Positions 5,283 through 45,794 of a stretch of DNA of 64,000 nt are shown here, piece by piece; positions within the stretch are counted from its first letter, which is position 1; every line of letters begins with the position of its first letter. The translations under genes and the position numbers were made by a program. The notes under the pieces are model-generated. The model was not told where the DNA came from. It ran no database searches and saw nothing but the letters and a program-made list of their open reading frames with translations. The DNA is from Euprymna scolopes. Lineage: Eukaryota. The DNA is taken from the NCBI GenBank assembly GCA_053919585.1, contig CM132804.1. One strand, 5' to 3'.

Positions 5283-5428
5283 GCACGACGCGTGGAAAGG
5301 GTCAAAGATGGCGAGCAGACCGGAATGAATTACAGAATGGACGATCGCGGTGAGGCGAGACGAAAACAATGGAAACCGAAGACGATCACGGATCGCAAAG
5401 AGAATGAAAAATGGAGGGAAAAAAAGTC
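5283..5428 (+). CDS. Putative first coding exon of the large membrane-protein gene: (ARRVERVKDGEQTG)MNYRMDDRGEARRKQWKPKTITDRKENEKWREKKS
   Basis: Purine/GC-rich island with acceptor ctcttctgcag| and consensus donor TC|GTGAGT at 5429. The frame is open throughout and ends in phase 2, matching the phase-2 acceptor at 29308 (TC+C = Ser, ...WREKKS-KWLSHVQ...). Not in the ORF track; linkage across 24 kb is inferred. Confidence 0.65.
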
Positions 5429-6844
5429 GTGAGTGCCTAATACTGGGCGATTCCATTAATTAGTTTGATGCTTTTTCTTATTCAAATTCATAAGAAAACG
5501 GTTGAAATCCGTGACATTTTGTTTAATGAAATTAAAGATAAAGGTGTAAGACAGAAAATAATATTTAACGAGACGATATTGCATACATACACACAAGAAC
5601 GTGCATAGATACTTGTACATATACACAAATAACTATATGTGTATGCTTGTGTGCGCGCGATCCATCCATAAACACGATGATAACTATTTCTAAACCAGTA
5701 TAAAATAGTGCTAAGTCTTCATTGGTCATATTTAATGGACAGGAAAAAATTCGTTTGCGATTTATTGTCACTTTTCCAATATAGTTTGCGTTTAATATGA
5801 ACAATTATCGGATCTATTTAAAACTTTAAGCATAACAGACCAAACTTAACCGTAACAAACTGATGAAACTTATTTGATTTAAACTAAATGGGCTAAATTT
5901 TTTTAATAAAAAAAAGTATTGATTTCTTATATATAATTTTATGTATCCACATAAAATTTTATAAGAAGCTATATGTCTGGATTTTCAGTATTTACTTCGA
6001 CAGTGCTTAATACGTGAGTAAAGCTATATAATGAGTTATGAAAAATATATGGCAATTCAGCTACACAGAATTTTCCGCGTTTCCTTATTGTAAGGGCGCG
6101 TCAAGCTAAAATTTAACGTGACGATTCTTTATGGGGATGAAATGCTGAAAATTCTATGTAGTCTAATACCGAGATATATTTTTTATAACTTTCTATATAT
6201 ATACATATACGCACGTGGATGTGTGTGTAATTATACATTTAAATAAATAAGTATTCACTCGTTTATGAGTGCCCGATGATGATTTGGGTGGAACAAAAGG
6301 GGAAACATGCAATTTCGCTCTCATTAGTTGCTGTTTTGTCTTAAACATCACCTTTGGATAACTATGAGCAGCATTTATTTTTCTTCAAGACATACTTCAT
6401 TATACAGCACCGACGACATGTGTTTCTATATTTTCTCTTTAATACGTTCCAGAAGCCTGTTCATGTTTCAGGTAGGAAATGGTAGATGAATCTGTTGTAC
6501 TAGTTGGGTACTCTAGTACCTTCGTTTCCTTCTTATACTATCTTCTGAATATATAAAAATATGTATACATGCATATATTGTATATATACATAAGTGATAA
6601 TAATAATTATAATAATAATATAATGAGCCTCGTCAGTACGAAAATGAGTGACGATTTAGTAATTCCAGGTACTGTATGTGCTCTCCGCTCGCTTATCTCG
6701 ACATTGTTTCCAGTCGTCCTGGATTTCACTTTGCTACTGGCTTTAAGGAGAGTTGTGGTTGGAGATTGTGCAACTCCTACCTCACAATTACATGCGCAGG
6801 TATCTATCCTTACAGGGGGTAATCATTCTTACGAGACGGAACAG

Positions 6845-6899
<55 letters not shown>

Positions 6900-6907
6900 A
6901 TCTACGG

Positions 6908-6941
6908 ACAGACTGTTTCGCTGTATTACAGCTCTTCTGCT
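6908..6941 (-). ncRNA. Minimal hammerhead-like motif with one core substitution
   Basis: Minus strand: CAGAAGA-GCTGT-AAT-ACAGC-GAAAC-A-GTC-TGT. CUGA is changed to CAGA; stem II is perfect. Confidence 0.5.
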
Positions 6942-7220
6942 GCTAGACTAACAATTACGTCAAACCAACCGTTACGCTATTTGGCTGTTGCTACGGTGGG
7001 TGAAATTATAATGTTCAAACATTGCCCAAACACCTAAGCTCTATTTGTTTACACAAAGATCATTGCTTTATACGCTAGCGGCAGTTTGTTATTTCACTCC
7101 CAATATGTTCAACCTAAGTTGAAGAGCATTTTAGTAATCCCCAGACAGACTGTTTCACAGCTTTAGACTAACAACTACGTCAAGCCAGGATTGATACTCG
7201 ACCGCCTAATCGCTTAAAAA

Positions 7221-7278
<58 letters not shown>

Positions 7279-7518
7279 CAGCTCTCTGAAAACGGGAGTA
7301 ATTCTATAAAATTACATCTAGAAAGTTGACATTTTCTTGATCAGCGTTGTCCTGGATGAATAATATACATAAAATTCTTTGACTATAATCTGGCGTAGAT
7401 TTCGTTAGAAGAAGATTGTTTTCCATCTATTCGATGTATTGACTAAAGGGAAGTAATAATGATTTTAAGGAGTTATTTCCTTTGCACCGACATATTCCTT
7501 GAGTAATCTACAAAAGTG

Positions 7519-7571
<53 letters not shown>

Positions 7572-9205: not shown

Positions 9206-9262
<57 letters not shown>

Positions 9263-9712
9263 ATATATATAATTACAAACATTACAAAGACAAATAAATA
9301 TTATCTTTAAACTTGGAACCTATCAAGATAATCAAAAGCTCAATATATATGCAATTAAAGAAATCGGAAAGATAGATGATGAATATAAAATTATATAAAT
9401 TACAATATTTACTGATTCGTCAAGGAATTATGATAATGAAAAATCCTTAATTCATGGATTTTCAAAGATATGCTTTTTTCATCAGAGGATAAAAATTATT
9501 ACAAAATTTTTCCACAATGCATCAGCGGTTAGCATAAATTTGAAAATATATAGAAATATAAAGAATATATATGAAGAGGATATGAAAAGAAGATATCTTT
9601 GAAAATCTATGGATTAAGGATTTCCCATTGTTATAATTCTTTTTTGAATTTAATGCATCAATAAATATTATAATTTATTCAATTTTATCTTCATTGTCTA
9701 TATTTTCCATTT

Positions 9713-9766
<54 letters not shown>

Positions 9767-9974
9767 CAAACTAGTGTTTCATTGTAAACAACTGATGATC
9801 CCTGAAATAATATTAGGACAATTTAAAATCTGAGAAAGCAAGTTAATTTAGTGATTGCAGGAGATTAAAAATAATTTTCCAACGAAGCAACCAATGAAGT
9901 TTTAACGAGGTTAATGCAAGAGTGCTCAATACTGAAGTAGGGCAAGATATTCTTATTCTTACATAGGTATTTAT

Positions 9975-10046
9975 ATATCGCTACACATTCATGAGCATGT
10001 TTCGATCGGCCAGGTACAAGTAACTAGAAAATTCTTCAGGCGATAT
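9975..10046 (-). ncRNA. Type I hammerhead-ribozyme-like motif with decayed stem II
   Basis: Minus strand: ATATCGC-CTGAAGA-[stem II]-GAAACATGCTCATGAATGTGTA-GCGATAT. Perfect 7-bp stem I, intact CUGANGA and GAAA core, GUA cleavage triplet. Confidence 0.6.
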
Positions 10047-19050: not shown

Positions 19051-19782
19051 CTTTTAAACATGAATTTATAAACACTTTACAACAGTGTCATGGATCGCTC
19101 GAGGCGGACTAATACACTTATTAACCCCTTTATACGGTTAAGTAAAACCAGGACGATTGGACGTTTCATGAAACTGCAGTAACGTGTTAAGATAAAGCCA
19201 TATTTTTTTAATTTGATGATACTTAGAACATGGCACAATCTGATAGGATATACATCCCTGTGTATAACTAGGATCCGTTGTCTTGATTCGTCTCTGAAAA
19301 CTGAAGCAGGGCCGAATTAAGAAAGCAGATCTTGGACAAATAACGGTTATGTATTAAAACAGATAAGGTTATATCAATTATAAATAATAATGAATTTCAT
19401 TTAGTTTAACATTTTACTCAGATGCAGTAAAATCTACGAAGTTCAGTTAAAAAATACAATGATGTAATGTGTTTATTTTATTACATTACTGAATCATTGG
19501 ATGTTCCATATCTTTGGGTTTCCTTCGTAGTTGCAATTGAGAGGCAGCGTTGAATTTTTCTCGATAAATAAGTCGTTCGCGTTTGAAGAAGTTTTGCTGT
19601 CTCTTAATTGCGACTGACCAAGCAGCCCGAAATAGATGGAACATCCAATTATTCAATAATGTATAATACCGTAATAATTAAAAAAAAAAAAAAAAAAAAA
19701 AAAACATCGCACAAAGGTTTACGACTAGGGTTTTTTATTTAACATGATATAAGCCTAGTTCATTCAAAAATTATCTTATTTC

Positions 19783-21736
19783 AAAACAATAGGATCAAAT
19801 AAAGAATATATACCCTGTAGCAGACGACGCCGCCTGGCGGCGACCGGTGCACATTTCAACGAACACCGGTGATTCGACCTTGACATTGGCACAAGCACAT
19901 GGCGTCGGTTGTTTGTAAACACGTCAAATAGCAAACATGCTCGAATATTCGCCAACATTTTTTTTTTTAAATATATTTGCAAAACTTTGGAAGATTTAAA
20001 CGAAAAAATATATATTTACAAAACATATTTTTTAAGTAAGTAACAAAACAAACCTATTTAAATAAAAGATATTTAAATAAATGTGTGTCTTTCTGTTTCG
20101 GATTTTTTGCGACCAAAATGTACCGTGTTTTTTTGTTTTTTTTTTGGGGGGGGGGTTCTGTGTGCGTTTTTAAGACCAATCAATATTTATTTAATTATTC
20201 TTTAAAACATTAACTTCACCAACAATTAATATATTTTTAAAATAATATTTTTAAATATCAGATTTTGATGAATATTCGCGAGCAAGATTTTTTTTTAAAT
20301 AAAAAATATTTAAATAAATGGGTGTCTTTCTGAGTGCGTTTTTAATATATTTACAGAACTTTTTAATAACTGTTTTATTCTTTTTATCAAGCAAAAATAA
20401 AACTTTTATAATGACATATATATTATGGACTGTTTTTCAAACATCGAAATTTTAAAATTAAAGTTAGTTTTATTAAAAAAAAAAGACGAGGTGTTTTTTT
20501 TCAATTAAATTATAAACTTTATTTGAACTTTCAACAAACTTTTACAGACATAAAAAATAGACTTTATAGATATTTTATAATAATTTTTAAAAAATATATT
20601 TAACGAAAAGTTTTTTTAATCATTTCATTGTCGAATAAAATTTCAAAGTGATAAATGGCGAAAAAAATTATATCGAAAAGAAAAAATACCTCGTCTTTTT
20701 TTATTTTAATGAAACTTTAATTTTAAAATTTCGATGTTTGAAAAACAGGCCATAATATATATTTCATTATAAAAGTTCTATTTTTGTTTGAAAAAAAGAA
20801 TAAAACAGTTAATAAATACAAAAAACAAAACAGAAAAAAACAAAAAAAAACAGTCTATTAAGTTCAATTAAAGACTCTTTGAATAAAACTTATTAAAAAA
20901 AAGGTTCATTCTATACGGTTTGGGCCATTTTTTTTCTGTGTACGTTTTTAATACAATTCTATATTTATTTAAAGTGCGATGTATGTCGGTGGTCAGTGAA
21001 GGAGAAATCCTCTAGGCCGAGGCAATTTTTATGCATAATAAAATCACAAGTATCGAGATTTAAAAAATATATTATTTTATTCACATATCTTTTTATAACT
21101 TTTATTTTTATAAAGATGAAATGTAGTATCACAAGATAGAAATCTTTTTATAATTTTTATTTCTATTAAAAAAAAACGCACTCAGAAAGACACCCATTTA
21201 TTTAAATATCTTTTATTTAAAAAAAATCTTGCTCGCGAATATTCGTCAAAATTTAATATTTAAAAATATTATTTTAAAAATATATTAATTGTCGCTGAAG
21301 TTAATGTTTTAAAGAATAATTAAATAAATATTGAATGGTCTTAAAAATGCACACAGAACCCCCCCCCCCAAAAAAAAAAAACACAGTACATAAAAATCAA
21401 TCTTGGTCGCAAAAATCCGAAACAGAAAGACACCCATTTATTTAAATATCTTTTATTTAACTACGTTCGTTTTGTTACTTACATATAAAAATGTTTTGTA
21501 AATATATATATTTTTCTTTTAAATCTCCAAAAGTTTTTTAAATATATTTAAAAAAAAAATTACTGGCGAATATTCGAGCATGTTTGCTATTTGACGTGTT
21601 TACAAACAACCGACGCCATGTGCTTGTGCCAATGTCAAGGTCGAATCATCGGTGTTCGTTGAAATGTGCACCGGTCGCCGCCAGGCGGCGTCGTCTGCTA
21701 CGGGGTGTGTATTCTTTACTTGATCCCAATAGTTTT
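19783..21736. mobile_element. Foldback-type element with ~560-bp inverted arms and a nested inner inverted repeat
   Basis: 19783-20343 is the reverse complement of 21170-21736; ORFs 19776-19982(-) and 21584-21817(+) share the same peptide. Inner IR 20367-20502 / 20681-20815. Confidence 0.85.
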
Positions 21737-22047
21737 ATGTCCATTTTTTGTAACTATACCCATTTGTGGTATACAAAATTCACCAAACATTACCGAATAG
21801 GCCTTACCAGTGCATAACAGATCACAGTTCGGCTGAAACAAAAACAAAATGCGTTCAATATTCATTTAACTGATAAAAATATATTTAATTTTATATTCGT
21901 TTTTTTTTTTTTCATTTCCTTTGTATCACTTAAATCTTACTGTGGTATGTTACTTTGACTGTGATCTGTTATGCACTAATAAAGCTTTTTTGTGAATGTT
22001 TGGTAAATTCTGTATACCATAAATATGTATATTTACCTAAGCGGCCA

Positions 22048-28962: not shown

Positions 28963-29307
28963 TATAAATAACTGCACAAAACCGCAAACTTAAATATACT
29001 NNNNNNNNNNNNNNNNNNNNNNNNNNNNNNNNNNNNNNNNNNNNNNNNNNNNNNNNNNNNNNNNNNNNNNNNNNNNNNNNNNNNNNNNNNNNNNNNNNNN
29101 NNNNNNNNNNNNNNNNNNNNNNNNNNNNNNNNNNNNNNNNNNNNNNNNNNNNNNNNNNNNNAAGTATTCATAATTTTTCCAAATAAATCTCCCAAAATCA
29201 CAAAAACCGTCGATTTTTTTAAAGCCATTCTGAATTTAACCGACTATAAATAAACCTTAATTAATTTGCTTTGATTTGTGCCTGTATGTTTCATATCCCC
29301 TTTGTAG

Positions 29308-32300
29308 CAAGTGGTTGAGCCATGTTCAAGAGACGGCTAATGAGGAATCACAGCCGGCCATGAATTTTGCCCCAGTTGAGGCCAGTCATTTTCGAAGTAA
29401 CTCACGTCAGTCGGCACCCGTAGCAAAGCCACCAACCGTTCAGCCTATACCATCAAAGGGCTCCGGGCCAACCACCCGTAATCTCCCTTTTACTCCAGTT
29501 TCGTTTAAGCCTAAGGAAATACCCATTCCAAAAGTGCTTCAAGTTATGCCACCACCAGTAAATATCCCCGTATTATCCCAGACAGAATTCCAACCCCCAC
29601 TACCAAGACCCAACTATGCCCAACCACCAAGATCCTTCTCTCCCCAACCACCAAGACCTTTATCTCCCCAAAGACCTTTCTCTCCCCAACCAAAAGCTCA
29701 GGTTCATCCTTCTGGTTTCGTAAACAAGCAATGGTCCCCTGTAGAATCCCCCAAATTTAATTTCTTGAAATCAAAAGTCCCGCACCCTGCCCCAGCACCA
29801 AGACGTGAAGCACCCCCGGCACCAGAACCAGAACCCGAGCCTGCTTATCGGCCTTGGGGGTCAGTAACCGCCGTACCACCACCATCTCTAAAGCTAGCAA
29901 AAGAACCTGAACCTGCGCCAAGCAATGTAAGAACGCCTGACGCAGACCGTGATCGAGTCTTTCAAGAACTTACATCAGCATTACAATGTTCCAAAACTTT
30001 TCCACGTGGTTCTTATGCGGCTAAGGAAAAACTGGGAGGTGGTGGTTCATTTTCACCTGCTGTCGCTCCTATGAGCCCTAGAGTCTCACGTACCATCCCA
30101 GCATACACAACTCCTACATATGCTCGTGTCACCCCACAAGCACCTGCACCTGTTGCGCCTGTCCCACCTGTTCAACCTGTACACCAGGCAATGCCACCAC
30201 CACAAATTACAGGATATTCCCATGTAAGCGCTCCTGGTTCTCAACCTAATTATTATGCGCAGTCACAAACTCCTGCGCCTGTCCCTGTCCGCTCAGCAAC
30301 TGTCTTATCCCCTGCCCATGTCAGTTCTCCAACGAAAACTTTTAAATTTGGACATGTAAGCCCACCAGTTGCTACCTATCAAACTCCAGTGTCTTACACG
30401 CAAGCAGAACAGGAAACAGATCAAGATGCAGAAGACGAATATGTATCTGCATCCGAACTAGAACCAGAATATTATATTGCACCAAAACCTAAAGCAAAAA
30501 CTTCTGAAACCAAACCAGTTTCTGCACCAAAACTGATATTTTCAGCTCAAGCAATACCTGCACGAAAACCAGTTTCAGCACCAGAAACAATTCCTGGGTC
30601 AGAAGTCTTTTTTGTGCCAAAACGGGTTTCTGAACCAGAACCTGTTATTTTATCAGAACCAGTTTATCAACGAAAACCGGTTTATGAACCCGAGCCGGTT
30701 TCTCAGCCAGAGCCGGTTTCTCAGCCAAAGCCGGTTTCTCAACCAGAACCAGTGTCTCAACCTGAGCCGATGTCTAAACCTGAGCAGACGTCTCAATCTG
30801 AGCCATTGGCTGAACCAGAATCAGTTTCTGAGCCCAAACCAGTTTCTGTAATAGAAATGGTTTCTGAGGTAAAACCAGATTTGGAGCCAGAGCCTGTTTC
30901 TGTTCCTGAACCAGCTTCTGAACCAGAACCAGTAACCGTTCCTCAATCTGAAACTGTTTCTGAACCAGAACCAAAATCTGAATCCACCTCTGTCGCAGAA
31001 CAGGAAGTTGAATCTCATCCAACCCCAGAAGAAAAAGTGGAACCATCAAGTACAGAAACTAAAACTGTTTCTGTACAAGAAGAAAAAGCTGAACCGGATT
31101 CTGTACCAAAACCAGAAGCAGAATCTGCTCCTGAACATGAATTGAAATCTGGACCGATTTCAGCATCAGAGGTAGAAATGGAATCAACCCCCATACAAGA
31201 AGTGGTTCCTGAACAAGAAACTGAAAAAGAATCAGTTCCTGTAACAGAATCGGTCTCTGAATCAGAACCAGTAGCTGCTATTGTACCTAAAACGGAAACA
31301 GAACTTGTCCCTGTGTCAAAACCAGAGGCAGAATCCGTTTCTGTATCAGAACCAGAACCCGCATCAGTAGTAGAACCAGAATCCGCGTCTGCACCAGAAG
31401 CAGAACCCATCCCTGTAGCAGAACTGGAATCTGTGCCAATCACAGAAGCGGAACATGTTCCTGTACCAGAAACAGAACACGTGTCTGTGCCAGAAGCAGA
31501 ACAAGTGTCAGTGCCAGAAGCAGAACAAGTTTCTGTGTCAGAAGCAGAACAAGTGTCTGTGCCAGAAGTAGAACAGGTGTCTGTGCCAGAAGCAGAACAG
31601 GTGTCTGTGCCAGAAGTAGAACAGGTGTCTGTGCCAGAAGCAGAACAGGTATATGTGCCAGAAGCAGAACAAGTTTCTGTGTCAGAAGCAGAACAAGTTT
31701 CTGGATCAACAACAGAAACCGTTACTGTATCAGAATCGGAAACTGTTACTGCATCAGAATCAGAAACTGTTACTGTATCAGAATCGGAAACCGTTACTGT
31801 ATCAGAATCAGAAACCATTACTGTATCAGAATCAGAAACTGTTTCAATATCTACCTCAGGAGAAGCTGTTTCTCTGCCCGATGCAGAATCAATTTCTGTG
31901 ACACTTGCAGAACAGGTTTCTGTTTCAGAGTCGAATGCAGAAGCTGCTTTAACACTGCAAGTGGAAACGGAAACTGCAGATTCCCAAACGGAATCAGAAC
32001 ACGTGTTAGTTATCGAGCAAACAGATTCTGGTCCCCAGCCCGAGTCCCAATCTGAATCCATTAGTGAATCTTTTAGTGTGACAGAACTTGAACCGATATC
32101 AATTCCCGAGCCGGAGCTGGAAGCCTGTATTGAGTTACAAGCCGATGTAGAGTGCGTTGTTGTTGAGCCAGAGGCCTCCAATTTACAGACGTCACCGGAA
32201 ACTGCCGCACCTGCTGCTGATAATGAAACAGATTCTGCTACAATTGTGGAGACCCTTCCGGAGGGCACGACCACTCAGTTAACTTCCAATGTTGAGGAGA

Positions 32301-32310
32301 GCGATTCCAG
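29308..32310 (+). CDS. 3003-nt coding exon: Pro-rich segment followed by Glu/Pro/Val/Ser (PEVK-like) tandem repeats
   Basis: Lies within the 1013-aa ORF 29276-32317. Acceptor cccctttgtag|C and donor TCCAG|GTATTA; phase 2-2; coding-like composition. Confidence 0.9.
30686..30850 (+). repeat. Coding 18-bp tandem repeat (EPVSQP)
   Basis: Repeated gagccggtttctcagcca units. Confidence 0.85.
31395..31845 (+). repeat. Coding 24-bp tandem repeats (EAEQVSVP ~10 copies, then ETVTVSES ~5-6 copies)
   Basis: Direct periodicity, e.g. gtgtctgtgccagaagcagaacag and actgttactgtatcagaatcagaa. Confidence 0.9.
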
Positions 32311-32650
32311 GTATTAACTATCAACATAATATTAGTATACATTAATGCANNNNNNNNNNNNNNNNNNNNNNNNNNNNNNNNNNNNNNNNNNNNNNNNNNN
32401 NNNNNNNNNNNNNNNNNNNNNNNNNNNNNNNNNNNNNNNNNNNNNNNNNNNNNNNNNNNNNNNNNNNNNNNNNNNNNNNNNNNNNNNNNNNNNNNNNNAA
32501 CTTAAAATAAATCACGGAAAAATATTTTTTATTATACAAATATGTGGTTTATTCCAAAGATTAATTTGTGCAATTTATAACAGATACTTGCCAAATTTGG
32601 AACTAACTAAAATAGAGTCTTCAATTTAAAATTCGACGCCACTAAAAATC

Positions 32651-34954: not shown

Positions 34955-35189
34955 AAAATGAAGAATTGAAGGATAAAATAAAAATTTAAGTTTATTTGTT
35001 TTATTTGTAACTATACCAAATCTGTTTCATTAACATTTCTTACATTATTTTTGTTAAGTGAATTTTTTTCAAATGAAATCATTTACATTCATTAAAGAAC
35101 AATATCTTTTCCTCAGTTTACGTTTTAATTTAAAATCTGAAACACAATACCGAAATAAACTAGCAATAAAGCATTGTTTTACATTTTGA

Positions 35190-35290
35190 AAATAATAACT
35201 AGTTGACAAAATAAATAGTGATTTAGAGCATAATAAAAATAATAACTAGTTGATAAAATAAATAGTGATTTAGAGCATAATAAAAATAAA
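35190..35290. repeat. 47-bp tandem duplication
   Basis: aataataactagttga(c/t)aaaataaatagtgatttagagcataataaa occurs twice. Confidence 0.85.
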
Positions 35291-37431
35291 TAATGCATTT
35301 AGAACATAATAAAAAAAAACAGAGCTGGACATATTGCACTTCACAAAAAAGTTAAACTTATCGGAAAACGGCAAATTATTGACGAACGAAGCGTCTCAGA
35401 GTGGTAAATTTAAAGAATGCAAACAATCAGGATTGTACAAAAATGCCTATCTTGTGAATACTCGAAATGATCAGAGAAGAAATTAAATACGTTACTTCGT
35501 TTTCGAATATTGAATATGCTTCGTTTGTTAATCGTTATTTATACATTGAGGTTTTAATAAGCAATTTCGGTCACATAGGTCTATAGATTTCAACTTATAG
35601 AATGGCATTCTTTGTAAATATTACGCTCTAAATTAATTGAGCAAATTGAAATCGTCAATGATCAATATTCTAGCAATGGTTGTTTATTATCAACATCTGA
35701 ATTTGATTTTTAAATTATAAATTATCAATTGTTTGAGTAAATATATACATAAGCACACCGTTGAGTTAAAATAGTACGACCGTTTTAAAAGAAGTGAGGC
35801 CCCGCACGCCCCTGAGTCCATCTCATCGTTTCTACTTCCGGCGATCACTACTTGGATTACTATTCTATCACAAACCGTCATTTCCACCTCACTTGACTCC
35901 AAAGTAATATTATTTATTCAGACGATATTATCATTAGTAGTAGTATTAGTAGTGTAGTAGCAGTAGTAACAGTACCCGTGTTTATTGTCCTCGTTATTAA
36001 GCTTCAATTAAATTGTTGCAGATTTATGATTTAAGTATTGCCCTGTGCATACAAATGAGTTCTGCTTAATACATCTGAGTTCGATTTTACCATTAAACTG
36101 TTTAATAAACTGCAATATCTGTTGATAAAATTATTTTATTTTATTTTTTTTTCTTGGACAATCTCGTCTATTTTGACTATTACTTTTTAATAAATAAAAA
36201 AACGTAACAACAATATAAATTTAATCGGAAAATAAATTCAAATACATTGCTGTCTACTTTTATTATAGTTATCTCGCCTAAAGCAAACAAACAAAAAATA
36301 ATTTTAATTTAAGAAAAACAAAAGCAAAAAAAGTTTTTCTCTTTATCTTTCACGCATCATACTGGATTTTCAATACGACAAATAAAGTATTTTTCAGCAA
36401 ACAAACAATGGATATTAAAAATGAGATTATAAAATATATGTAAACTTTATCTAATAAATACATAATTTAACATTTGATAAACTATGAAGATTCAAATTTA
36501 AAAGTTCATAAAAATCTTTTTCAACCAGCAAATTTTCAAAGACTATATTCAGGACATCAGTGAGTTTTATTGGATATCTTACTGGCTTAGCAGGCTGAGA
36601 GCAGGTTCAAGGTGTACCCTTGAATAATGAAAATGGAGAAGACCGGTGTATTTTGATTGCTTGTGCTTCTCTATTTACGGTGTTACGTGACTAGAGTTTG
36701 TTGCAAATCCCGTGACGACTTGCTAGTAGTATAGTATACTTTAAGAATATGCTTATGTTTTTGCTACTGCTAAAATCTTTTTGTAATGAACAACGCACTT
36801 GCTTTCAATATTCTATTAATCTCTTAGTCTTCAATATAGCTTTCATCAAAACTGCCTTATTTACCCCATTTGTATGTGTTCAACATTCAAATGTTAGAAG
36901 TGTTCATAATTATTCGCTTGTTTCTCATTCAAACAATGCACTTGTTGTGAGACAGTGGCAGACAATCCAGCGAGGACAAATGACTGGTCGTAATATTTTA
37001 GCTCATCAGTGCTAATAGAAACATAAAATCATTTTTTATAAAACTATGAAATAAATATTGAAAATTAATTACGAAGTTAAACTTATCTTATTCATCTATT
37101 TTTATNNNNNNNNNNNNNNNNNNNNNNNNNNNNNNNNNNNNNNNNNNNNNNNNNNNNNNNNNNNNNNNNNNNNNNNNNNNNNNNNNNNNNNNNNNNNNNN
37201 NNNNNNNNNNNNNNNNNNNNNNNNNNNNNNNNNNNNNNNNNNNNNNNNNNNNNNNNNNNNNNNNNNNNNNNNNNNNNNNNNNNNNNNNNNNNNNNNNNNN
37301 NNNNNNNNNNNNNNNNNNNNNNNNNNNNNNNNNNNNNNNNNNNNNNNNNNNNNNNNNNNNNNNNNNNNNNNNNNNNNNNNNNNNNNNNNNNNNNNNNNNN
37401 NNNNNNNNNNNNNNNNNNNNNATATATATAG

Positions 37432-37483
<52 letters not shown>

Positions 37484-38184: not shown

Positions 38185-39165
38185 ACCGTGGATAGAAATC
38201 TTACGTGTGTTTTCGTTTTTCCTAAGTTTTCAAACCCTCCATCTTTCTTCAATATCTAGTATTTTAACATCATCCCATATTGGGGAATGGGTGCCTTTTT
38301 TTCTCTACATATATGGTCTGGTAGGGCTAATTTTTCAATTTCTATGATAGCTTTTCGCTGTTCTTCTAGTTTTACTTTGAGGAGGCGGCTTGGTTCCCTT
38401 TGTAGAGTTTTCCACATTTACATTACATCTCATAAACGCAGTTTTTTGTCATGAGTTTTTCGTTTCGGTCGGGGGTTTTACTCGTACAAGATGTTTTCGG
38501 AGAGTTGAGTTGCTCCTGACTACTGTCCTAATATCATACCGACTGCATTTTTTTTTTTAATTTTTCGGGTAGGCTTTTCGAGTATGGTATGCAGACTGTG
38601 GTGGGTTTTATGTGAATTTTATGTTTTTGGTGTTTGGGCTAGATTTTCTGGAGCTGATGTCATGCTCTCTGGGTATTTATTTCAGTGGAGGATTATTCTT
38701 AGATTGGCCATCTCTTTTGATATGCAATGTTGTTATTACATATTGTCCTATTGTAGGCATTGGACTACGTCTTTCTTTACAGCAAATGAATGGTGCGAGT
38801 TAAACTTAAGGTACTGTCCTGTGAAGATTAGCTTTCGATATACGAATGACACAAAACTCTGATCAGTGCGGGTTATCAATACATCCAGAAAAGATAGTTT
38901 GTTGCCATGTTCCTTTTCCATAGTGAGCAGAATGGATGAGTGAATTGAGTTCACATGTTCCAGTAGTACTTGAACGTCCTCATGGTGGGGCCAGAGTATG
39001 AAAGTATTATTCACATATCGTAGCCACATTGTTGGTTTTTGTGGGACTGATCTTATTGCCAGTTCCTCGAAGTGCTCCATATATATGTTGGTTAGCACTG
39101 GCGATAATAGCGATCTCATAGCTAGGCCTTCTTCCTTTTGGTATATAAACGTTGTGCCAATAACA
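38185..39165 (-). mobile_element. Penelope-like retroelement relic: RT C-terminal half, thumb and GIY-YIG endonuclease
   Basis: ORF 38748-39170 contains GLAMRSLLSPVLTNIYME, WLRYVNNTF (decayed YVDD), LSFLDVLI, VYRK and YLKFNSHH. Downstream minus-strand reads KNCVYEM*CKCGKLYKG and WDDVKILDIEERW, typical of the PLE endonuclease. Confidence 0.9.
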
Positions 39166-40314
39166 TCCAAAAATGAGAATTATTGTCTGAACAATCAAAA
39201 CGCTACAAGCATTCATATCTCATCTACAAAATTCAGAACTGAATTGTTTTTAATGGACATTTTATTTTCTCGAATCTTCAATAAACAGAAACGTTTCTAA
39301 TCTTCCGACATTTTTCATTTGCTGTTTTATATAAATATTTGTTTTAAAGTATAGGGTCGGTTTGGGGTGGTGGATATTCATGTTAAATCTGTTTGCACCT
39401 TTTTAGTGCTAATACAAAATTCACCCAATATTTAAAAAATAATAAAATAAACTCCATATGATATACGTACCTGTGACGGTAAGAAAATATCAGTGACGTG
39501 CAGAGAACTTTTTCAGGACAGGTACTCAAGTGAAAAACAAAACGGCAATAATATAGTAATAAACGTGTCTTGGTGGGGCACACGTCTATAATACATTCCT
39601 CTGAAAAGGGCACTTTTAAAACAGAAGTAAAAAAGGCAAGGTTTCTGCACGTCCCTGAAAAATATCATATTCCATAACTGTTTAATTTTTTTATTCATCT
39701 AAAAACTTCAGTGAGATTTTAAAAATCAATATGGCTTTTGTTTTTGTCTTTACTTTTGATTTTTTTTAAACACAAATGTTCTGTTTCAAATGACATCATT
39801 CATACTCAGCGTCTCCGAATAGCAACATTTTTGAAAAATGTAAGTTGTTGTTTTATTATTATTTTATCTCACAACACAATTTAATACATGTTTCTACACA
39901 ACCTCCATCCAATGCTACCCGCCATTTTAATTACCTAACACAACAACCCCGTGCCGCTTCAACGCCAATTTTACCTCAACTATACAACCGCGCGCCGCTT
40001 TCTCTCCATAAGACCGCAAGCGTTTCTTATAATTTCTTTTTTATTATTATTATTATCTAATAAGCGCATATATTGAAAACAATGGAGAGGACCTTCTTCT
40101 CCTCCTTCCCCTCCCGCGATGATTTTTTTTTTCATTTTGATTTTTTTCCTTTTTATGGTGGCTTTGTGTGACGCGTGTAATTGCAATAACAACTTATGCT
40201 TTTAACCAAAACCCTTCAATGTTGAAACGTATCGTCTGATTAAATATTGTTGTATATTCTATGCTGATAACACTATCAAAGCTTTTAGTGTGATGATATT
40301 GAATTGCCCACGTA

Positions 40315-40358
<44 letters not shown>

Positions 40359-40829
40359 CATCATCATCATTTGATTTAAAATGACAAATAAGAGCATTGC
40401 AATTCCTAGACTGAGCCATTTAGAAAATATACTACCGCCATTCTATATTAAGTGACCACATTTGAAAATGCTGAATTGGTCACTTATTGTAGAGGGGAGA
40501 TAGTAAATTTGATGTATATACATATATGAAATACACAATTGTTTCCGCCTGTGCAAATATTAAAGTTTTTTATGCTAAAATCCATCAAATAGAACATAAT
40601 GAATATACTTATAAAATGTTCTTTCTGACAGAAATTAGGTTCTCAATATTTACCATTATTAATAACTTACAAAAATTACATAATTTACAAAAATCATACA
40701 TATATTAACCAAGACAATGTGATATAATGTAATATATGTGCAAGATTTTAATACTACATACAAGAAGCGTAAAATAAAGAATGATTATTTTGATAAATTA
40801 GTATGAAGAAAACGTTAATCAAATATATT

Positions 40830-40896
<67 letters not shown>

Positions 40897-40970
40897 GAGA
40901 ATCTTGATGTTGTGTTGTTCAATTCCATGTGTATATTTTAATAACTGTGTATGTCCTTATATTCGTCCAG

Positions 40971-41618
40971 CCAAAGGCGACGAAGGCCCCAAATTGCGTC
41001 TTTTCTACCGAGTCCTTCAGATATGAAAGCATTTGAGCCGGAGGCTGGTGTGCCACCAAAGACAGCACCAACACCGGCACCTAAACCGGCGCCCAAACCG
41101 GCGACTAAACCCGCACAAAAACCGGTACCTGAATGGAAAGCAAAGACGGCGATGGTACCCGAGTCGGTATCTGAGCCGGAACCTAAACCGGTATCTGAGC
41201 CAGTACCTGAACCGGTATCTGAGGCGATACCGGAACCAGTAACCGAGTCGGTACCTAAACCGATATTCGAGCCAGTTCCTGAGCCTATATCCAAGCCATT
41301 ACATAAGCCGGTATCCGAGTTGGTGCCTGAGCAGATATCCGAGCCAGTAGCTGAGCCGGTATCCAAGCCTTTATCAAAGTCGATACCTGAGCCTGTATCT
41401 GAACCGGCCCCTGTGTATGTTTCCAAAACGAATATACAAGAATCCACCAAGGAACAAGTAATCGTTTCGAAAGAATCTGCTGCACCAGAACGAAAAGTCC
41501 CTAGACGCAGGCGGCGTGACTTGAAGGAAGTGTCTTCTCCGACGCCTGACCAGGTTTCTGCGACTATAACTAAACCCTCGGAATCCGTTCCGAAAACAAT
41601 CGAGAAACCAGTTTCCAG
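40971..41618 (+). CDS. 648-nt coding exon with PAPKP/EPVS repeats and two Arg clusters
   Basis: Lies within ORF 40951-41664. Acceptor attcgtccag|C and donor TCCAG|GTATCT; phase 2-2; in frame with the flanking exons. Confidence 0.88.
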
Positions 41619-43782
41619 GTATCTATCACTAATATATACAAATAGCCAATTAAAATTTACATAGGGATGCACAGCCAACAACCCTTTTTAGAAACAGATA
41701 ACACTCTTGTACAAAAAAAACTATTCTGTTTTCCTATATAAGTGAGCTTTTATAACTCATTTATTTGAATTCAGAAAAAAGGTTTTTGCTTGAATAATGC
41801 TGGGCGACAAATGATACTAACAAGTAACTGCGTTATATTATTAGTTGTATGAAATTCTGAGCATATCAATCATTTATTCTTTCTTAAATACAAAAAAGAA
41901 ACATTAGTTCAGACTATTATTTTAATAACATAATTACAAGCGGCTGATGTAGTTAGTAAAACATGAGATTGATATAAAGGAGAACACATCCGTTTTGGGT
42001 GATATTGTAAATAAAAAATAGAAAGATTGAATTAAATGTTGTAAGTAAAATAATAATCATAATGTATACAAGAAAAAGGAACTGTCCCAAGGTTTCTTTT
42101 AATTTTATTTTTAATTAAAAATACATAATCTTGCAACTCATATGGAGAGGAAGCAATGTTGTATATAGCTCAATCCTTTCACTATACTCTTTTAGTAACA
42201 CCAGTACATTTTCCATCATGCTCTATTTAATACAACCGTTTAAAAAAATTGACGCAAGTAAAAAAAAAATGATGAAATTCGGCACAACAACCTAGTGGGT
42301 CCTTTCAAGATGAATTGTTATTTACCTATATCTGAAAAACAAATCCATACATTCATATTTAAATTAGAAATAAATTGGGACGTGGTAAATAGCAGAAATT
42401 TAACTTGTTTTTATGTTTTTTTTATTAGTTGTCATTTACCAATTAGCTGTCTTTCATTAAAAAAATTGGATTATAAAATTTATTTTATTTAACCATATGA
42501 ATGCAATTGAAAGCGAATCATAAAATTAGTTTCATAAAAATTAGTTTCGTAAAATTAGTTTCGTAAAAATTAGTTTATTAGTTAAAAATTAGCCCATACC
42601 AAGAACATCTGTGTTCGTTTTCATAGTTTATTTTCTATGAAAATTGTTAGTCATTAAATTCAACAAAATAATGTGGAACTATTAATTTATTTGATTTTTA
42701 TATTTTAAGACGTTATTTATTTTTCGTTCTGTGATGGCCATTATAAAGGAAATAATATACTTTGGTCAATTATTAAATCGAATAAAAAAATATGACCGCC
42801 ATCAATAGACGGTAATGTGGATTTCAACGAAAAAGTCACAATTACACAAGATGCGGTGCATTCTATTTTAAATGGTGTTCAATTGCTTTACTTTCTATTT
42901 ATCAGATCTACAGAACACCGTCACATGACAATTAAAGAATCCTAAACCTGAATCAATCAAACCGAAAATACAAATTATAGTCAAATTCCATACTGTCACA
43001 GATAAAATAATTTTGCAGACAAAATTGTGTACTACAGTTAAATTAGTATAATTAGATTTTCGGTACATATTTCAGATATGTATTATGGTTTCATTGACCT
43101 TTCACTGCTCAGAAAAGGTCGTTACAATCCATCCAAAATTCCTCAGCGACTCACGACATGAAGACAAATCGATTTGTTTTCTATTTCGTGAATTTTATTG
43201 ATTTCTTCTCANNNNNNNNNNNNNNNNNNNNNNNNNNNNNNNNNNNNNNNNNNNNNNNNNNNNNNNNNNNNNNNNNNNNNNNNNNNNNNNNNNNNNNNNN
43301 NNNNNNNNNNNNNNNNNNNNNNNNNNNNNNNNNNNNNNNNNNNNNNNTTATATATCGGAATACTTTCCTTCTCGTCAGAGGGGAGGAATTAATAAAATGT
43401 AGAAAGAAATTTTGCCTGTAAAGTATTCAAAGAAACTAAGTATGAAAAGAATCATACTAGCATGAAAGTAAGATGTAGAATAATGAAACAGAGTGGAATG
43501 AAAAAAGAAAAAATGGTTTCACACGAGAGTGTGTTCCCATGGTGGTCGAGACCAAAATCAGGTATATCAGAGAAAGTGGTAGTAATAAAATATCCATGTT
43601 TATAGTATTCCGAGAGCATGTTGCTGGAGATTATAAATGGTTCAAAGAATAATGATTGATGACAGAATTTTAGGGGAAAATTGTTCCACTGTCTAAATAC
43701 GTTCATAAATGAACAGGTTATACTGAAGAACTTGTAGGAGGCATTTTCAGAACTGTTTTTTTTTTCGTCATTATCCCGCATA

Positions 43783-43880
43783 TAGCGCCTGGTATTTACA
43801 AATAGTCACTCATTTCACACTGGCCAGGCTCGACGTCTCTTAATTTCTGTGATTAACGAAAACCAGTGTGTCGACGTATT
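43783..43880 (-). pseudogene. Decayed 5S rRNA-derived copy (intronic)
   Basis: Reverse complement: gtcgacacactggttttcgttaatcacagaaattaagagacgtcgagcctggcc...gagtgact...aataccaggcgct. Confidence 0.75.
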
Positions 43881-45394
43881 CGATGTATATATCTAGAAAA
43901 CATCTATTCGTTTTAATCAATAAACAATATTATTATAGTCGATCCAGCATAGATTAGAAAGCAAAGCATTAAGACTTTTTCGATTTTTTTTATAAGGATT
44001 GATAATTTGGATAATTGGATTATTCCAATTACTATTCTCATTTTCGTTGTTATATTCACAATGTTTCCGCCGATGTAACCTCCAACATTCATTGGATATC
44101 TTCTAGATTAACTCGGAAACCAGCACGAAATTTTGAACTGGCCTTTTATTTAATCCATGGAAGTAGAGTCTTCTTATTCCGTCAGCCATGTCCGGGTAGA
44201 AGTGTTAATTTTATGTTATTTTAGGTTAGTATCGTCTGAATGTTTCACTTAGAACTGGACCAATGTCATAATTAATTAACAGTCACTTAATAAGAAATCT
44301 AAAGAGTAGAACGGCTGAAACGTTGTGAAGATGGCAAAAACTAAATGAAAAACACGGTCCTAAACAAAGTAAATATCAGAGAAAAATAGTCAAAAATATA
44401 TGTTATTCTGTCTTGTTGGCTGTGCCCTACTGTAAATAATCAGTAACAGATAGACATCATTTTAGAAGACTTTATTAACAATCTTGTGTGAACACGTTCG
44501 ATTTTTAATGAAATTAATATATTTTTTATATAGTTATCTTAATAATTATATAATTAATTCAAATTAATATAAAAGCATTCTGAAATTAAACGTGTTAAAA
44601 ATACCTTGTAAATTTCATTTTACCCAAATAGTAAAAGTATATTTATGTTTTAATTGTGTAAATTTTCTATCAAATCATTCAGTAGGATTATCTCCCTTGG
44701 GAAGTATCCACATTCGTATTTCTTTCAGACATATTTCGTTTACTAAAATGGACATTCTGCGTCTATCAGATCTGTTGATCGTTTTTATTTCATTTTATTC
44801 TATTTTTTCTAACGATCGTTCGCAAATCAGGGTTTAAGGTAAATAAACAAATTCAAAACCCATGTTGTCTGTAACGTTCTTCAATTTTTTCAGGTTTCGA
44901 CTCAAATATATCCTCCAATCCAAATATTCTTTTCCATCCAACTTTGACAAGATATCTTGTCTTTGTTATTTGGCTAGAAATTCGTCAGATAGATGACTTA
45001 AAGTTAATTGGAATCTCAATAAATGAATACATAACTAATGTTTACACAACATGGCGTTTTGGAAAATGTTTTATCTACAACGACCTTGGCTGCGGACGTT
45101 TGTTAAGATTTGAGAACGAATAATTAATAGACACAGAATGCCCTTATTTTACCGCTTTATCAAATTTAGACACAAAGTCGGTTTTACTTGTAGATGTTAT
45201 CCAGCTCCCCAGAAAGGGGCGCTTTGTCACCGAAACATGTTTGAAAGAATGAATGCTGCCCAACCAAGTCATATTAAAATTCCTGTAGTAAAATTTCCCA
45301 ATTCATTTCACACCAGTTTCTTCTCAAGTTCTAATCTTAAAAAATGTTGTTGGCGTGACAGTATTTTCTCATAGAATTTCGTAATTCTCCGCAG

Positions 45395-45794
45395 ATCACC
45401 TCCTTCTCCAGCAGGCCCTGCCCAAACAAAGGAAAGGAGCGCGGAGGACAAAGGGTCCAAGGATAACGGCCTGCCACGTTGGCTCATTCCTCTCACCCTG
45501 CTCGTCCTCCTTGGCGCTGCCGTCGCTGCCTTGTTCATGTACCGTGAATCGCTCCAGGAAAAGTACCCGACGCTTTACACTTTGCTCGATGTGATAGCGG
45601 TGCGTGGAAGGCAGATTGAACCTTCAACTCAAACTGAGGATGTCGCTGAAGCTGCCGCCCAAGTGATGGAGTCAGCAATTCCAAGTGCAGAGGATCTCGC
45701 CTCCGGTGTAGAATCGGTTCTGGAACAAGGAGATTATGTTTGCACGGAGGAGGTGATTACTCCGGAAGAAGGCGTCAAAGTTGAGAACTGCTAA
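45395..45794 (+). CDS. Terminal coding exon: TM helix WLIPLTLLVLLGAAVAALFMY plus acidic tail ending VKVENC*
   Basis: Acceptor ttctccgcag|A, phase 2 (AG+A = Arg). Same frame as ORF 45531-45794; stop TAA at 45792-45794; hydrophobic stretch of ~21 aa; GC-rich island. Confidence 0.88.

What the first reader, a model, noticed from the sequence alone, without database searches (positions are those of the whole stretch)
5283..45794. Unrecognised ~1380-aa single-pass membrane protein with a giant PEVK-like arm and an acidic C-terminal tail
Seen: four separate exon islands, only three of them in the ORF track, splice into one frame (104+3003+648+400 = 4155 nt from ATG 5325). The product has a charged Trp-containing N-terminus (DRKENEKWREKKSKWLSHVQE), a Pro-rich block with PxxP and SP motifs, ~800 aa of E/P/V/S repeats, one TM helix and an ~85-aa acidic tail with two Cys. 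No signal peptide or globular domain is visible. Inference: N-cytoplasmic topology with a long disordered arm and an acidic luminal tail, as expected for an elastic ER/SR membrane tether. It is conceptually like junctophilin- or junctin-type proteins but has no MORN repeats or KASH peptide. The function is a hypothesis only.
Basis: partly seen in the sequence, partly recalled or inferred. Interest (0 to 1): 0.7.

Follow-up and report, generated by a model that had tools for sequence, protein, structure and literature searches.

The report
Membrane-anchored Zasp-like scaffold gene, cephalopod
This is the 3' two-thirds of a real cephalopod gene. Its protein very probably starts with a muscle Z-disc-type PDZ plus ZM module encoded outside the window, continues as a huge acidic disordered arm, and can end in a membrane anchor that a conserved 30-base stop-carrying exon switches off.

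Summary
Exons 29308-32310, 40971-41618 and 45395-45794 are real. They have canonical splice sites and one frame, and RNA-derived contigs match them at 99.9-100% identity. A cuttlefish orthologue covers all three. One strong TM helix (45480-45542) and an 83-aa acidic tail with two Cys are conserved.

Contigs from four studies join 29308 to a different exon that ends ...SAAMGGGNT(A). That is the end of the cuttlefish exon carrying the ZASP-like motif (DUF4749), and it is absent from the readable window.

The cuttlefish protein (1616/1692 aa) has a PDZ domain, a ZM motif, the same disordered arm, the TM helix and the tail. So the gene is a LIM-less ALP/Enigma-like (Zasp-like) scaffold with a C-terminal membrane anchor, not a domain-less orphan.

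Both RNA contigs that cover the 3' end include an unnoticed 30-nt exon (39810-39839) with an in-frame TAG that stops translation before the anchor. Its donor block is conserved in cuttlefish.

The direct 32310->40971 junction was not observed. It is inferred from frame, coding constraint and the orthologue. All assembly gaps lie in introns; none was filled.

A role as a tether between Z-elements and SR or sarcolemma is inference. I class it as a new variant of a known kind.

The parts
29308..32310 (+). Giant exon (3003 nt, phase 2 at both ends). The first ~380 aa are Pro-rich with blocks conserved in cuttlefish: KWLSHVQE, LPFTPVSFKPKEIPIPK, SPKFNFLK, TPDADRDRVFQELTSALQCSKTFPRGSYAAKEK. The next ~620 aa are acidic E/S/V/P repeats (net charge -113), built from 18-nt x17 and 24-nt x22 tandem arrays.
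   Evidence: sites and frame. (RNA contigs start at 29308 with a spliced loose end). (cuttlefish P0001 aa 409-1341; 42% identity by tblastn, 55% over the first 500 aa). (composition, repeats, predicted disorder).
39810..39839 (+). 30-nt cassette exon with an in-frame TAG at 39820-39822. When included, the protein ends ...ESDS-SVSE before the TM anchor.
   Evidence: Present in both Logan RNA contigs L001 and L002. Canonical cag|C ... T|gtaagt sites. Its 3' end and donor lie in a block conserved in the cuttlefish intron (85% over 39 nt, E 1e-6), collinear with two further conserved intron blocks.
40971..41618 (+). Exon 3 (648 nt, phase 2 at both ends). It starts with the conserved RRRRxQIAxFL block, followed by P/E/V/S/K-rich repeats.
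   Evidence: L001 nt 57-704 match at 100%. Aligns to cuttlefish at 50% identity. dN/dS 0.39.
45395..45794 (+). Last coding exon: juxtamembrane segment, TM helix, 83-aa acidic tail ending ...QGDYVCTEEVITPEEGVKVENC, and the stop codon at 45792-45794.
   Evidence: L001 and L002 join 41618 to 45395. 68% identity to cuttlefish, with both Cys conserved. dN/dS 0.39 with codon-position identity 2nd>1st>3rd.
45480..45542 (+). Transmembrane helix WLIPLTLLVLLGAAVAALFMY.
   Evidence: KD19 maximum 2.56; it is the only strongly hydrophobic stretch in exons 2-4. The AF2 helix at exon-4 residues 30-56 has the highest pLDDT of that model. 17 of 21 residues are identical in cuttlefish.
45795..45848 (+). 3' UTR, at least this far. 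The contigs end in the (TA)n run.
   Evidence: L001 reaches 45830 and L002 reaches 45848.
5283..5428 (+). It is not supported as the partner of 29308. At best it is a possible minor alternative first exon.
   Evidence: Against: the loose ends in four studies differ from its 3' end; cuttlefish has no counterpart. For: it is the most CpG-dense unique stretch upstream and the only ATG...GTRAGT candidate of the right phase in 29 kb. My rough estimate of such candidates by chance is about one.
30431..30475 (+). Conserved EDEYVSASELEPEYY block after an acidic run. It resembles a phospho-FFAT motif (core E-Y-V-S-A-S-E). This is a lead only.
   Evidence: Identical core EYVSASE in cuttlefish. Motif definition is from PMC7705450. 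No scoring matrix was run, and such motifs are common.

Best explanation
The window holds the 3' part of a cephalopod gene for a LIM-less ALP/Enigma-like (Zasp-like) scaffold protein.

Shown:
- Three large symmetric phase-2 exons are transcribed and spliced.
- The exon spliced onto 29308 ends exactly like the cuttlefish ZM-motif exon, in the same phase.
- The cuttlefish orthologue reads PDZ, ZM motif, about 1000 aa of acidic disordered arm, one TM helix, then an 83-96 aa acidic tail with two Cys.
- A 30-nt exon carrying a stop codon lies between exons 2 and 3. It is included in the available RNA contigs, and its donor region is conserved in cuttlefish.

Inferred:
- Two protein classes are made.
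- If the 30-nt exon is skipped, the frame runs on into exons 3 and 4. The product would then be anchored by its C-terminal TM helix, with the PDZ-ZM head and the arm in the cytosol and the acidic Cys-bearing tail in the lumen or outside the cell.
- If the exon is included, a soluble protein ends just after the arm.
- By analogy with ALP/Enigma proteins, the PDZ (with ZM) head docks on alpha-actinin at Z-elements or dense bodies.
- The anchored isoform would then tie these structures, through a long polyanionic entropic spring, to a membrane. The most likely membrane is the sarcoplasmic reticulum that runs between the dense bodies in cephalopod obliquely striated muscle. The sarcolemma is the alternative.
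- Splicing of the stop exon would set how much of the protein is membrane-bound.
For: - Splice sites and frame.
- RNA contigs from four studies start at 29308 with the loose end CAGCGCTGCAATGGGGGGCGGAAACACAGC. In frame this reads SAAMGGGNT(A)|KWLSHVQE.
- The cuttlefish protein reads ...AALGGGNTV|KWLSHIQQ.
- The cuttlefish genomic contig L006 ends that exon as ...GGGGGGAGGAAACACGGT|gtaagt, in the same phase, and its product hits PF15936.
- P0001 has DUF4749 at 34.1 bits (cut-off 28.7) and PDZ at 25.1 bits (cut-off 23.2).
- P0001 aa 409-1616 is collinear with exons 2, 3 and 4.
- The TM helix and tail are conserved.
- dN/dS is 0.39 for both exon 3 and exon 4, and the Met that opens the 331-aa contig ORF is not conserved.
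- The stop exon is in L001 and L002. Its donor block is conserved.
- PDZ-alpha-actinin binding in Zasp proteins: abstracts of PMC5081203 and PMC3591300.
- LIM-less PDZ+ZM paralogues Zasp66/67: PMC3591300 lists them as Alp/Enigma family members; that they lack LIM domains is from my own knowledge.
- SR between the dense bodies of the Z plane in cephalopod muscle: PMC4757648.
Against: - The PDZ and ZM parts were not seen in this species beyond the last 10 residues of the ZM exon. They are not in the readable window.
- The cuttlefish model has only the second half of a PDZ domain, after a hydrophobic and probably mispredicted first exon.
- That PDZ half matches SYNJ2BP and DLG PDZ domains better than PDLIM ones in the PDB.
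- The skipping isoform (32310->40971) was not observed in this species. Both available contigs carry the stop exon.
- There are no data on tissue, localisation, topology or binding.
- Only two species are known. No relative of the TM-plus-tail part was found among 1.84 billion representatives.
Confidence: 0.6

Rival explanations
1. One reading: an independent protein of about 1384 aa starting at ATG 5325, from an alternative first exon (5283/5325-5428) spliced to 29308, without PDZ or ZM.
For: - 5251-5450 is the most CpG-dense unique stretch upstream (GC 0.47, 16 CpG per 200 nt against a median of 5).
- It is the only ATG-to-GTRAGT candidate of at least 80 nt with the right phase in 29 kb.
- It is unique within the window.
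Against: - One contig in each of four runs from four studies shows a different partner for 29308.
- There is no counterpart in the cuttlefish protein.
- An upstream ATG at 5309 opens a short out-of-frame ORF.
- By my rough estimate, about one such candidate is expected by chance in 29 kb of AT-rich DNA.
- Read as a cassette after the ZM exon, it would hit a stop codon.
Confidence: 0.12
2. The main or only product is the soluble form. The stop exon is constitutive in this species, exons 3 and 4 are 3' UTR, or the stop exon is a poison exon that sends the mRNA to decay. The membrane anchor would then be a prediction artefact of the cuttlefish annotation.
For: Both RNA contigs that cover the region (L001, L002) include the 30-nt exon with the TAG. 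The direct 32310->40971 junction was not observed.
Against: - Exons 3 and 4 keep an open frame continuous with exon 2 for 348 codons.
- They show coding constraint between octopus-like and cuttlefish sequences: dN/dS 0.39 and second-position identity highest.
- The TM helix is 17/21 identical and both Cys are conserved.
- The internal Met is not conserved.
- The exon is 30 nt, a multiple of 3, so skipping it keeps the frame.
Confidence: 0.15
3. A type I mucin-like surface protein: an upstream signal peptide, the P/E/V/S/T arm outside the cell, and the acidic tail in the cytosol.
For: - The arm is Ser/Thr/Pro-rich.
- The charges flanking the TM helix are nearly balanced.
- The cuttlefish model starts with a hydrophobic stretch.
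Against: - The exon directly upstream is the ZM-motif exon of a PDZ protein, which is a cytoplasmic module.
- The hydrophobic start of the cuttlefish model replaces the first half of the PDZ domain, so it is most likely a mispredicted exon.
- Two conserved Cys in the tail fit an oxidising compartment better than the cytosol.
Confidence: 0.04
4. Two separate genes, a Zasp-like gene upstream and a TM-protein gene here, are merged by annotation or by read-through.
For: The cuttlefish proteins are automatic predictions. No protein containing exon 2 was found for this species in the length ranges searched.
Against: Spliced RNA from four independent studies joins the end of the ZM exon precisely to 29308. 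The same junction and phase are seen in cuttlefish.
Confidence: 0.04

Closest known systems
ALP/Enigma (PDLIM, ZASP/Cypher, Drosophila Zasp52) family, especially the LIM-less Drosophila paralogues Zasp66 and Zasp67
   Same: - An N-terminal PDZ followed by a ZASP-like motif (Pfam DUF4749) in the orthologue.
- No LIM domains, as in Zasp66/67 (their lack of LIM is my own knowledge).
- Many symmetric exons that allow isoforms.
- Long intrinsically disordered isoform regions, as reported for Zasp52 (PMC13521563, abstract).
   Different: - No family member is described with a transmembrane helix. The 2022 family review has no occurrence of the word 'transmembrane' (PMC9751615).
- Here the C-terminus is a TM helix plus a conserved acidic tail with two Cys.
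- The disordered arm is about 1000 aa with net charge around -110.
Synaptojanin-2-binding protein (SYNJ2BP/OMP25)
   Same: A PDZ domain at the N-terminus and a single C-terminal membrane anchor. It is the best PDB match to the cuttlefish PDZ half-domain (E 2e-4), though DLG4 scores about the same.
   Different: From my own knowledge, SYNJ2BP is about 145 aa, has no ZM motif and no long arm, and its TM lies at the very C-terminus (mitochondrial outer membrane). Here 83 aa follow the TM.
Sarcomere-to-SR tethers and junctional proteins (small ankyrin-1 with obscurin, junctophilins, junctin/triadin). These are functional analogues recalled from memory.
   Same: The concept: a membrane-anchored protein that links the SR to a defined sarcomere position, or holds membranes at a set distance.
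   Different: There is no sequence or domain relationship. Pfam finds no MORN, ankyrin or Asp-beta-hydroxylase-type segments. Junctin and triadin are anchored at the N-terminus.
KASH-domain proteins (nesprins)
   Same: A large cytoplasmic part, a C-terminal TM and a short conserved luminal peptide with a Cys.
   Different: The tail is 83 aa, not about 30, and ends ...VENC / ...IEDC rather than PPPX. There are no spectrin repeats.
Titin PEVK segment
   Same: A low-complexity, proline- and glutamate-rich, unstructured segment that could act as an entropic spring.
   Different: The composition is E/S/V/P with only 3% Lys and a strong net negative charge. There is no homology.

Membership tests
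ALP/Enigma (PDZ-ZM-LIM) family | N-terminal PDZ domain | tested here: inconclusive
   It is not in the window. The cuttlefish orthologue P0001 has PF00595 at 25.1 bits (cut-off 23.2), but only profile positions 31-80, after a probably mispredicted first exon. Its best PDB matches are SYNJ2BP and DLG rather than PDLIM PDZ domains.
ALP/Enigma (PDZ-ZM-LIM) family | ZASP-like motif (ZM; Pfam DUF4749) | tested here: met
   Cuttlefish P0001 has PF15936 at 34.1 bits (cut-off 28.7), E 5e-8. The genomic exon L006 also carries PF15936. In this species, RNA contigs show the last 10 residues of that exon (SAAMGGGNTA against AALGGGNTV) spliced to 29308 in the same phase. The motif itself was not seen in this species.
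ALP/Enigma (PDZ-ZM-LIM) family | One or three to four C-terminal LIM domains | tested here: not met
   There is no LIM hit in P0001 or in exons 2-4. No LIM-like Cys/His pattern occurs in any of the six frames of the window. The Drosophila members Zasp66/67 also lack LIM (own knowledge), so this makes it a LIM-less relative rather than excluding kinship. LIM-containing isoforms from exons outside the window cannot be excluded.
Tail-anchored membrane proteins | A single TM helix within about 30-40 residues of the C-terminus, inserted post-translationally | tested here: not met
   There is a single TM helix, but 83 residues follow it (96 in cuttlefish). It is C-terminally anchored but not a classical tail anchor. 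The insertion route was not testable.
KASH proteins | A TM followed by a luminal peptide of about 30 aa ending in PPPX | tested here: not met
   The tail is 83 aa and ends VENC, or IEDC in cuttlefish.
Junctophilins | N-terminal MORN repeats plus a C-terminal TM | tested here: not met
   No MORN hit in exons 2-4 or in P0001.

The most novel reading that the evidence does not exclude
This would be the first membrane-integral member of the Zasp/ALP-Enigma lineage. It would be a cephalopod Z-element-to-SR (or sarcolemma) spring tether whose membrane anchoring is switched on or off by a conserved 30-nt stop-codon exon. It could explain how SR tubules are held between dense bodies in obliquely striated muscle.
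Probability: 0.3. Interest if true: 0.7.

Novelty: new variant of a known kind. Interest (0 to 1): 0.5.

Why it matters
ALP/Enigma (Zasp, PDLIM) proteins are core Z-disc scaffolds and are known as soluble adaptors. A version that swaps the LIM domains for a 1000-aa polyanionic arm and a conserved membrane anchor would be a new way to couple the contractile lattice to a membrane.

Cephalopod obliquely striated muscle has SR tubules interleaved with the dense bodies of the Z plane (PMC4757648), and I know of no identified tether for them. This gene is a concrete, testable candidate.

The conserved stop-carrying micro-exon gives a simple splice switch between soluble and anchored forms.

For annotation, the locus seems to lack a correct full-length model in this species. 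The only matching protein found was a 331-aa ORF from a transcript contig.

Tried and rejected
- **Pfam on each exon translation:** only sub-threshold low-complexity hits.
- **Word-based protein search with exon 2 (region 1-400):** only the cuttlefish protein was found.
- **Same search with the first 200 aa of exon 2,** aimed at short transcript fragments that might span the upstream junction: nothing.
- **Same search with cuttlefish P0004 region 1-900,** aimed at longer orthologues (930-2961 aa): only its own cluster and an unrelated Oikopleura PDZ protein.
- **phmmer of exon 4 against 1.84 billion representatives:** only the species' own 331-aa contig ORF, plus a low-complexity match to an unrelated 2801-aa repeat protein.
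- **tblastn of the cuttlefish N-terminal 408-490 aa against the window:** nothing credible. The best hit had E 0.075, on the minus strand, with an internal stop.
- **Search for the 26-nt loose-end sequence in the window with up to 3 mismatches:** 0 hits.
- **CpG-rich islands at 19751-20000 and 21501-21800,** checked as possible hidden exons: they are two inverted copies of one repeat.
- **AlphaFold2 on exon 2 aa 1-500 and on exon 4,** each with a two-sequence alignment: low confidence apart from the TM helix, so no fold search was made.
- **Literature searches for a TM-bearing ZM protein:** none found.
- **Earlier-findings look-ups for upstream exons:** nothing useful. Only (word 'PDZ') returned a note, and it was irrelevant.
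- **Not done, by instruction:** the joined spliced model was not assembled, searched or folded. Exons were searched apart, by reference.
- **Gaps and human-like sequence:** no N gap was filled.

Full report
**What is in the sequence**

The window is AT-rich animal DNA (about 30-35% GC, many (TA)n runs, transposase and reverse-transcriptase remnants). The only close protein relative is from a cuttlefish, so the source is a cephalopod. The 42-68% protein identity to cuttlefish suggests a distant one, probably an octopod, but run and organism names were coded and I did not identify the species.

| Exon | Coordinates | Length | Acceptor | Donor |
|---|---|---|---|---|
| 2 | 29308-32310 | 3003 nt | ttgtag\|C | CAG\|gtatta |
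| 3 | 40971-41618 | 648 nt | tccag\|C | CAG\|gtatct |
| 4 | 45395-45794 | 400 nt with stop | cgcag\|A | none |

All three are in one frame with phase-2 boundaries.

- Exon 2 encodes about 380 aa of Pro-rich sequence (P 21%). This is followed by about 620 aa of E/S/V/P repeats (E 21, S 15, V 15, P 13%; net charge -113). The repeats come from 18-nt and 24-nt tandem arrays.
- Exon 4 holds the only strongly hydrophobic stretch, WLIPLTLLVLLGAAVAALFMY (KD19 2.56; 45480-45542).
- After the helix come 83 residues with 18 D+E, 5 K+R and 2 Cys.

**Assembly gaps (tested first, as asked)**

All N runs within the finding lie between supported exons. No supported exon contains an N.
- RNA-derived contigs cover 29308-30700 with no indel and at most one mismatch.
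- Contig L001 is 100% identical to 32285-32310, 39810-39839, 40971-41618 and 45395-45830.
- So the gaps at 32350-32498, 37106-37421 and 43212-43347 are intronic and do not affect the frame.
- The five gaps between 22048 and 29161 lie in the intron upstream of exon 2. They could hide an exon. I did not fill them or look their letters up.
- The repeat copy number in exon 2 beyond about 31540 is unverified.

**The orthologue**

A word-based search with the non-repetitive part of exon 2 found one protein: Acanthosepion (Sepia) pharaonis CAE1241646.1, 1616 aa, E 1e-75, with Pfam PDZ and DUF4749. An isoform of 1692 aa also exists.

tblastn places its parts collinearly:

| Cuttlefish aa | Window exon | Identity (tblastn) |
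|---|---|---|
| 409-1341 | exon 2 | 42% |
| 1362-1486 | exon 3 | 48% |
| 1486-1616 | exon 4 | 58% |

- Its first 408 aa have no counterpart anywhere in the readable window.
- hmmscan confirms DUF4749 (the ZASP-like or ZM motif, TRIMHLQYNSPLDMYSKENVAETLQGQ) at 34.1 bits against a cut-off of 28.7.
- It also confirms a half PDZ domain at 25.1 bits against 23.2.
- The half PDZ follows a hydrophobic 25-residue start that most likely comes from a mispredicted first exon.

**What RNA shows at the 5' side**

Nineteen public runs from eight studies hold the 5' part of exon 2. I laid four of them, one from each of four studies, including one recorded as poly-A RNA-seq, on 29162-30700.
- Each run has one contig of about 2260 nt. 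It covers nothing in 29162-29307 and starts 26-30 nt before 29308 with the same loose end, CAGCGCTGCAATGGGGGGCGGAAACACAGC.
- In the frame set by exon 2 this reads S-A-A-M-G-G-G-N-T-(A) followed by KWLSHVQE. The cuttlefish protein reads A-A-L-G-G-G-N-T-V followed by KWLSHIQQ.
- The cuttlefish genomic contig L006 ends this exon as ...TTGGGGGGAGGAAACACGGT|gtaagt. That is the same place and the same phase, and its product carries PF15936.
- So the exon spliced to 29308 is the homologue of the ZM-motif exon.
- The 26-nt loose end has no match in the window with up to 3 mismatches. The true upstream exon therefore lies beyond the window start or in a gap.

The stretch 5283-5428 is not worthless.
- It is the most CpG-dense unique piece of the upstream 29 kb.
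- It is the only ATG-to-GTRAGT candidate with the right phase.
- By my rough estimate, about one such candidate is expected by chance.
- It has no cuttlefish counterpart.
- I keep it as a possible minor alternative first exon, at about 12%.

**What RNA shows at the 3' side**

phmmer with exon 4 against 1.84 billion representatives found a 331-aa ORF, P0002, that is 100% identical to exon 4 over its last 132 residues. It comes from two transcript contigs, L001 and L002.
- L001 maps as 32285-32310 | 39810-39839 | 40971-41618 | 45395-45830.
- This proves the 41618->45395 junction.
- In the exon-2 frame it reads (AG)C GTC TCC GAA TAG. This isoform therefore ends ...ESDS-SVSE, upstream of the TM helix.
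- The 331-aa ORF is only what a gene caller makes of the remainder.

I still think the skipping isoform exists, for these reasons:
- The micro-exon is 30 nt, so skipping it keeps the frame.
- Exons 3 and 4 continue the exon-2 frame for 348 codons.
- Against cuttlefish cDNA they have dN/dS 0.39 and the coding signature of codon-position identity 2nd>1st>3rd.
- The TM helix is 17/21 identical, both Cys and the QGDYVCT.E..TPE.G...E.C end are conserved, and the RRRRxQIAxFL start of exon 3 is conserved.
- The Met that opens the 331-aa ORF is not conserved.

**Conservation of the stop exon**

The cuttlefish transcript contig L003 retains 1.65 kb of the intron before exon 3. Blastn between that intron and window 39600-40975 gives collinear conserved blocks:
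- one over the micro-exon's 3' end and donor (window 39829-39867; 85% over 39 nt, E 1e-6);
- one further block inside the intron and one over the start of exon 3 (both E 1.7e-10).

In the alignment ATTTTGAAAA.TGTAAGTTGT is nearly invariant. Cuttlefish has two possible acceptors:
- one gives a 45-nt exon with an in-frame TGA;
- the other gives a 26-nt exon that shifts the frame into a stop 12 codons inside exon 3.

Either way, inclusion would end the protein before the anchor. Inclusion in cuttlefish RNA was not shown.

**Structure**

AlphaFold2 used only a two-sequence alignment.
- For the first 500 aa of exon 2, mean pLDDT is 44.7. There are two short helices, at exon-2 residues 2-12 and at the conserved PDADRDRVFQELTSALQ block.
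- For exon 4, one confident helix covers the TM segment and the rest has low confidence.
- So no globular domain is encoded in the window. The globular and recognisable parts sit upstream.

**What it is**

PDZ followed by a ZM motif is the hallmark of ALP/Enigma (PDLIM, ZASP/Cypher, Zasp52) proteins. Drosophila also has Zasp66 and Zasp67 (PMC3591300), which to my knowledge have PDZ and ZM but no LIM domains.
- The cuttlefish protein has no LIM domain.
- The window has no LIM-like Cys/His pattern in any frame.
- I therefore file the gene as a LIM-less ALP/Enigma-like relative. It is not a full member by the three-part definition.
- Nothing in the family literature I could search mentions a membrane-spanning member.
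- The TM-plus-tail module has no detectable relatives outside cephalopods.
- It is not a classical tail anchor, because 83 residues follow the helix.
- It is not KASH, because the tail is long and has no PPPX end.
- It is not junctophilin-like, because there are no MORN repeats.

**How it most likely works (inference)**

In Zasp/ALP-Enigma proteins the PDZ domain binds alpha-actinin at Z-discs (PMC5081203 and PMC3591300 abstracts). I expect the same for the head of this protein.
- PDZ and ZM are cytoplasmic modules. So the N-terminal ~1700 residues should be cytosolic and the 83-aa tail luminal or extracellular.
- The two conserved Cys in the tail fit an oxidising compartment.
- The charge balance around the helix is weak (+1 against 0), but the far side is strongly acidic.
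- With 83 residues after the helix, the TM helix can leave the ribosome before termination. Late co-translational targeting is therefore possible (general knowledge).
[quoted passage not shown] Peripheral couplings sit where Z elements meet the sarcolemma (PMC4757648).
- A protein with an alpha-actinin-binding head, a ~1200-aa polyanionic unstructured arm and a membrane anchor is a natural candidate to hold these membranes at the Z plane while the striation angle changes.
- The stop exon would set the ratio of anchored to soluble protein.
- Which membrane it enters, which tissue expresses it and which partners it binds are all untested.

**Procedural notes**

Each exon was handled by reference.

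**Verdict**

Exons 2-4, the TM helix and the tail hold. Exon 1 and the 32310->40971 junction do not.

The gene is not an orphan without domains. It is a membrane-anchorable, LIM-less Zasp-like scaffold with a conserved splice switch. This is a new variant of a known kind, of moderate interest.

Noticed in passing
window 39810-39839 and the intron down to 40970: A 30-nt stop-codon cassette exon, with conserved intronic blocks shared with cuttlefish (L003 948-984, 1205-1295, 1379-1409). This pattern is typical of regulated alternative splicing.
   Followed up: yes
window 30431-30475: A conserved EDEYVSASE(L/P)E(P/A)EY block after an acidic run. It resembles a phospho-FFAT (VAP-binding) core E-Y-V-S-A-S-E. 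Such motifs are frequent in proteomes, so this is only a lead.
   Followed up: partly
window 29162-30700 (contig starts) and 32285 (start of L001): In every run the transcript contigs break 26-30 nt before a splice junction, which is about k-1 of the assembler. This would fit the ZM exon and the end of exon 2 each having more than one downstream partner, that is, further isoforms. All exons here are multiples of 3 nt, so skipping any of them keeps the frame.
   Followed up: no
window 19751-20000 (-) and 21501-21800 (+): Two CpG-rich inverted copies of the same repeat, each with a 77-aa ORF (LLFDVFTNNRRHVLVPMSRSNHRCSLKCAPVAARRRRLL...). They are not exons of this gene.
   Followed up: partly
window 54119-54234 (+): An Rfam 5S rRNA match covering the full model, 41.5 bits against a gathering score of 38. 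It could be a 5S gene, a pseudogene or a 5S-derived element.
   Followed up: no
window 394-1037 (-), 55750-56144 (-), 38748-39170 (-): Tc1/mariner-like transposase remnants and a reverse-transcriptase remnant. The RT remnant lies in the intron between exon 2 and the micro-exon.
   Followed up: no
window 5251-5450: A unique CpG-dense island (GC 0.47) in otherwise 30% GC DNA, with a short upstream ORF (ATG at 5309) and a strong GTGAGT donor at 5429. It could be an alternative promoter or first exon, or an exon of something else. No RNA evidence was obtained.
   Followed up: partly
L003 1-1650 and L004 1-170 (cuttlefish transcript contigs): The intron before exon 3 is retained while the exon 3 to exon 4 junction is spliced. 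This points to slow or regulated removal of this intron, or to an internal transcription start.
   Followed up: no
window 29521 and 29808: A>C differences between the window and contigs of some runs. These are probably polymorphisms and are not A-to-I editing.
   Followed up: no
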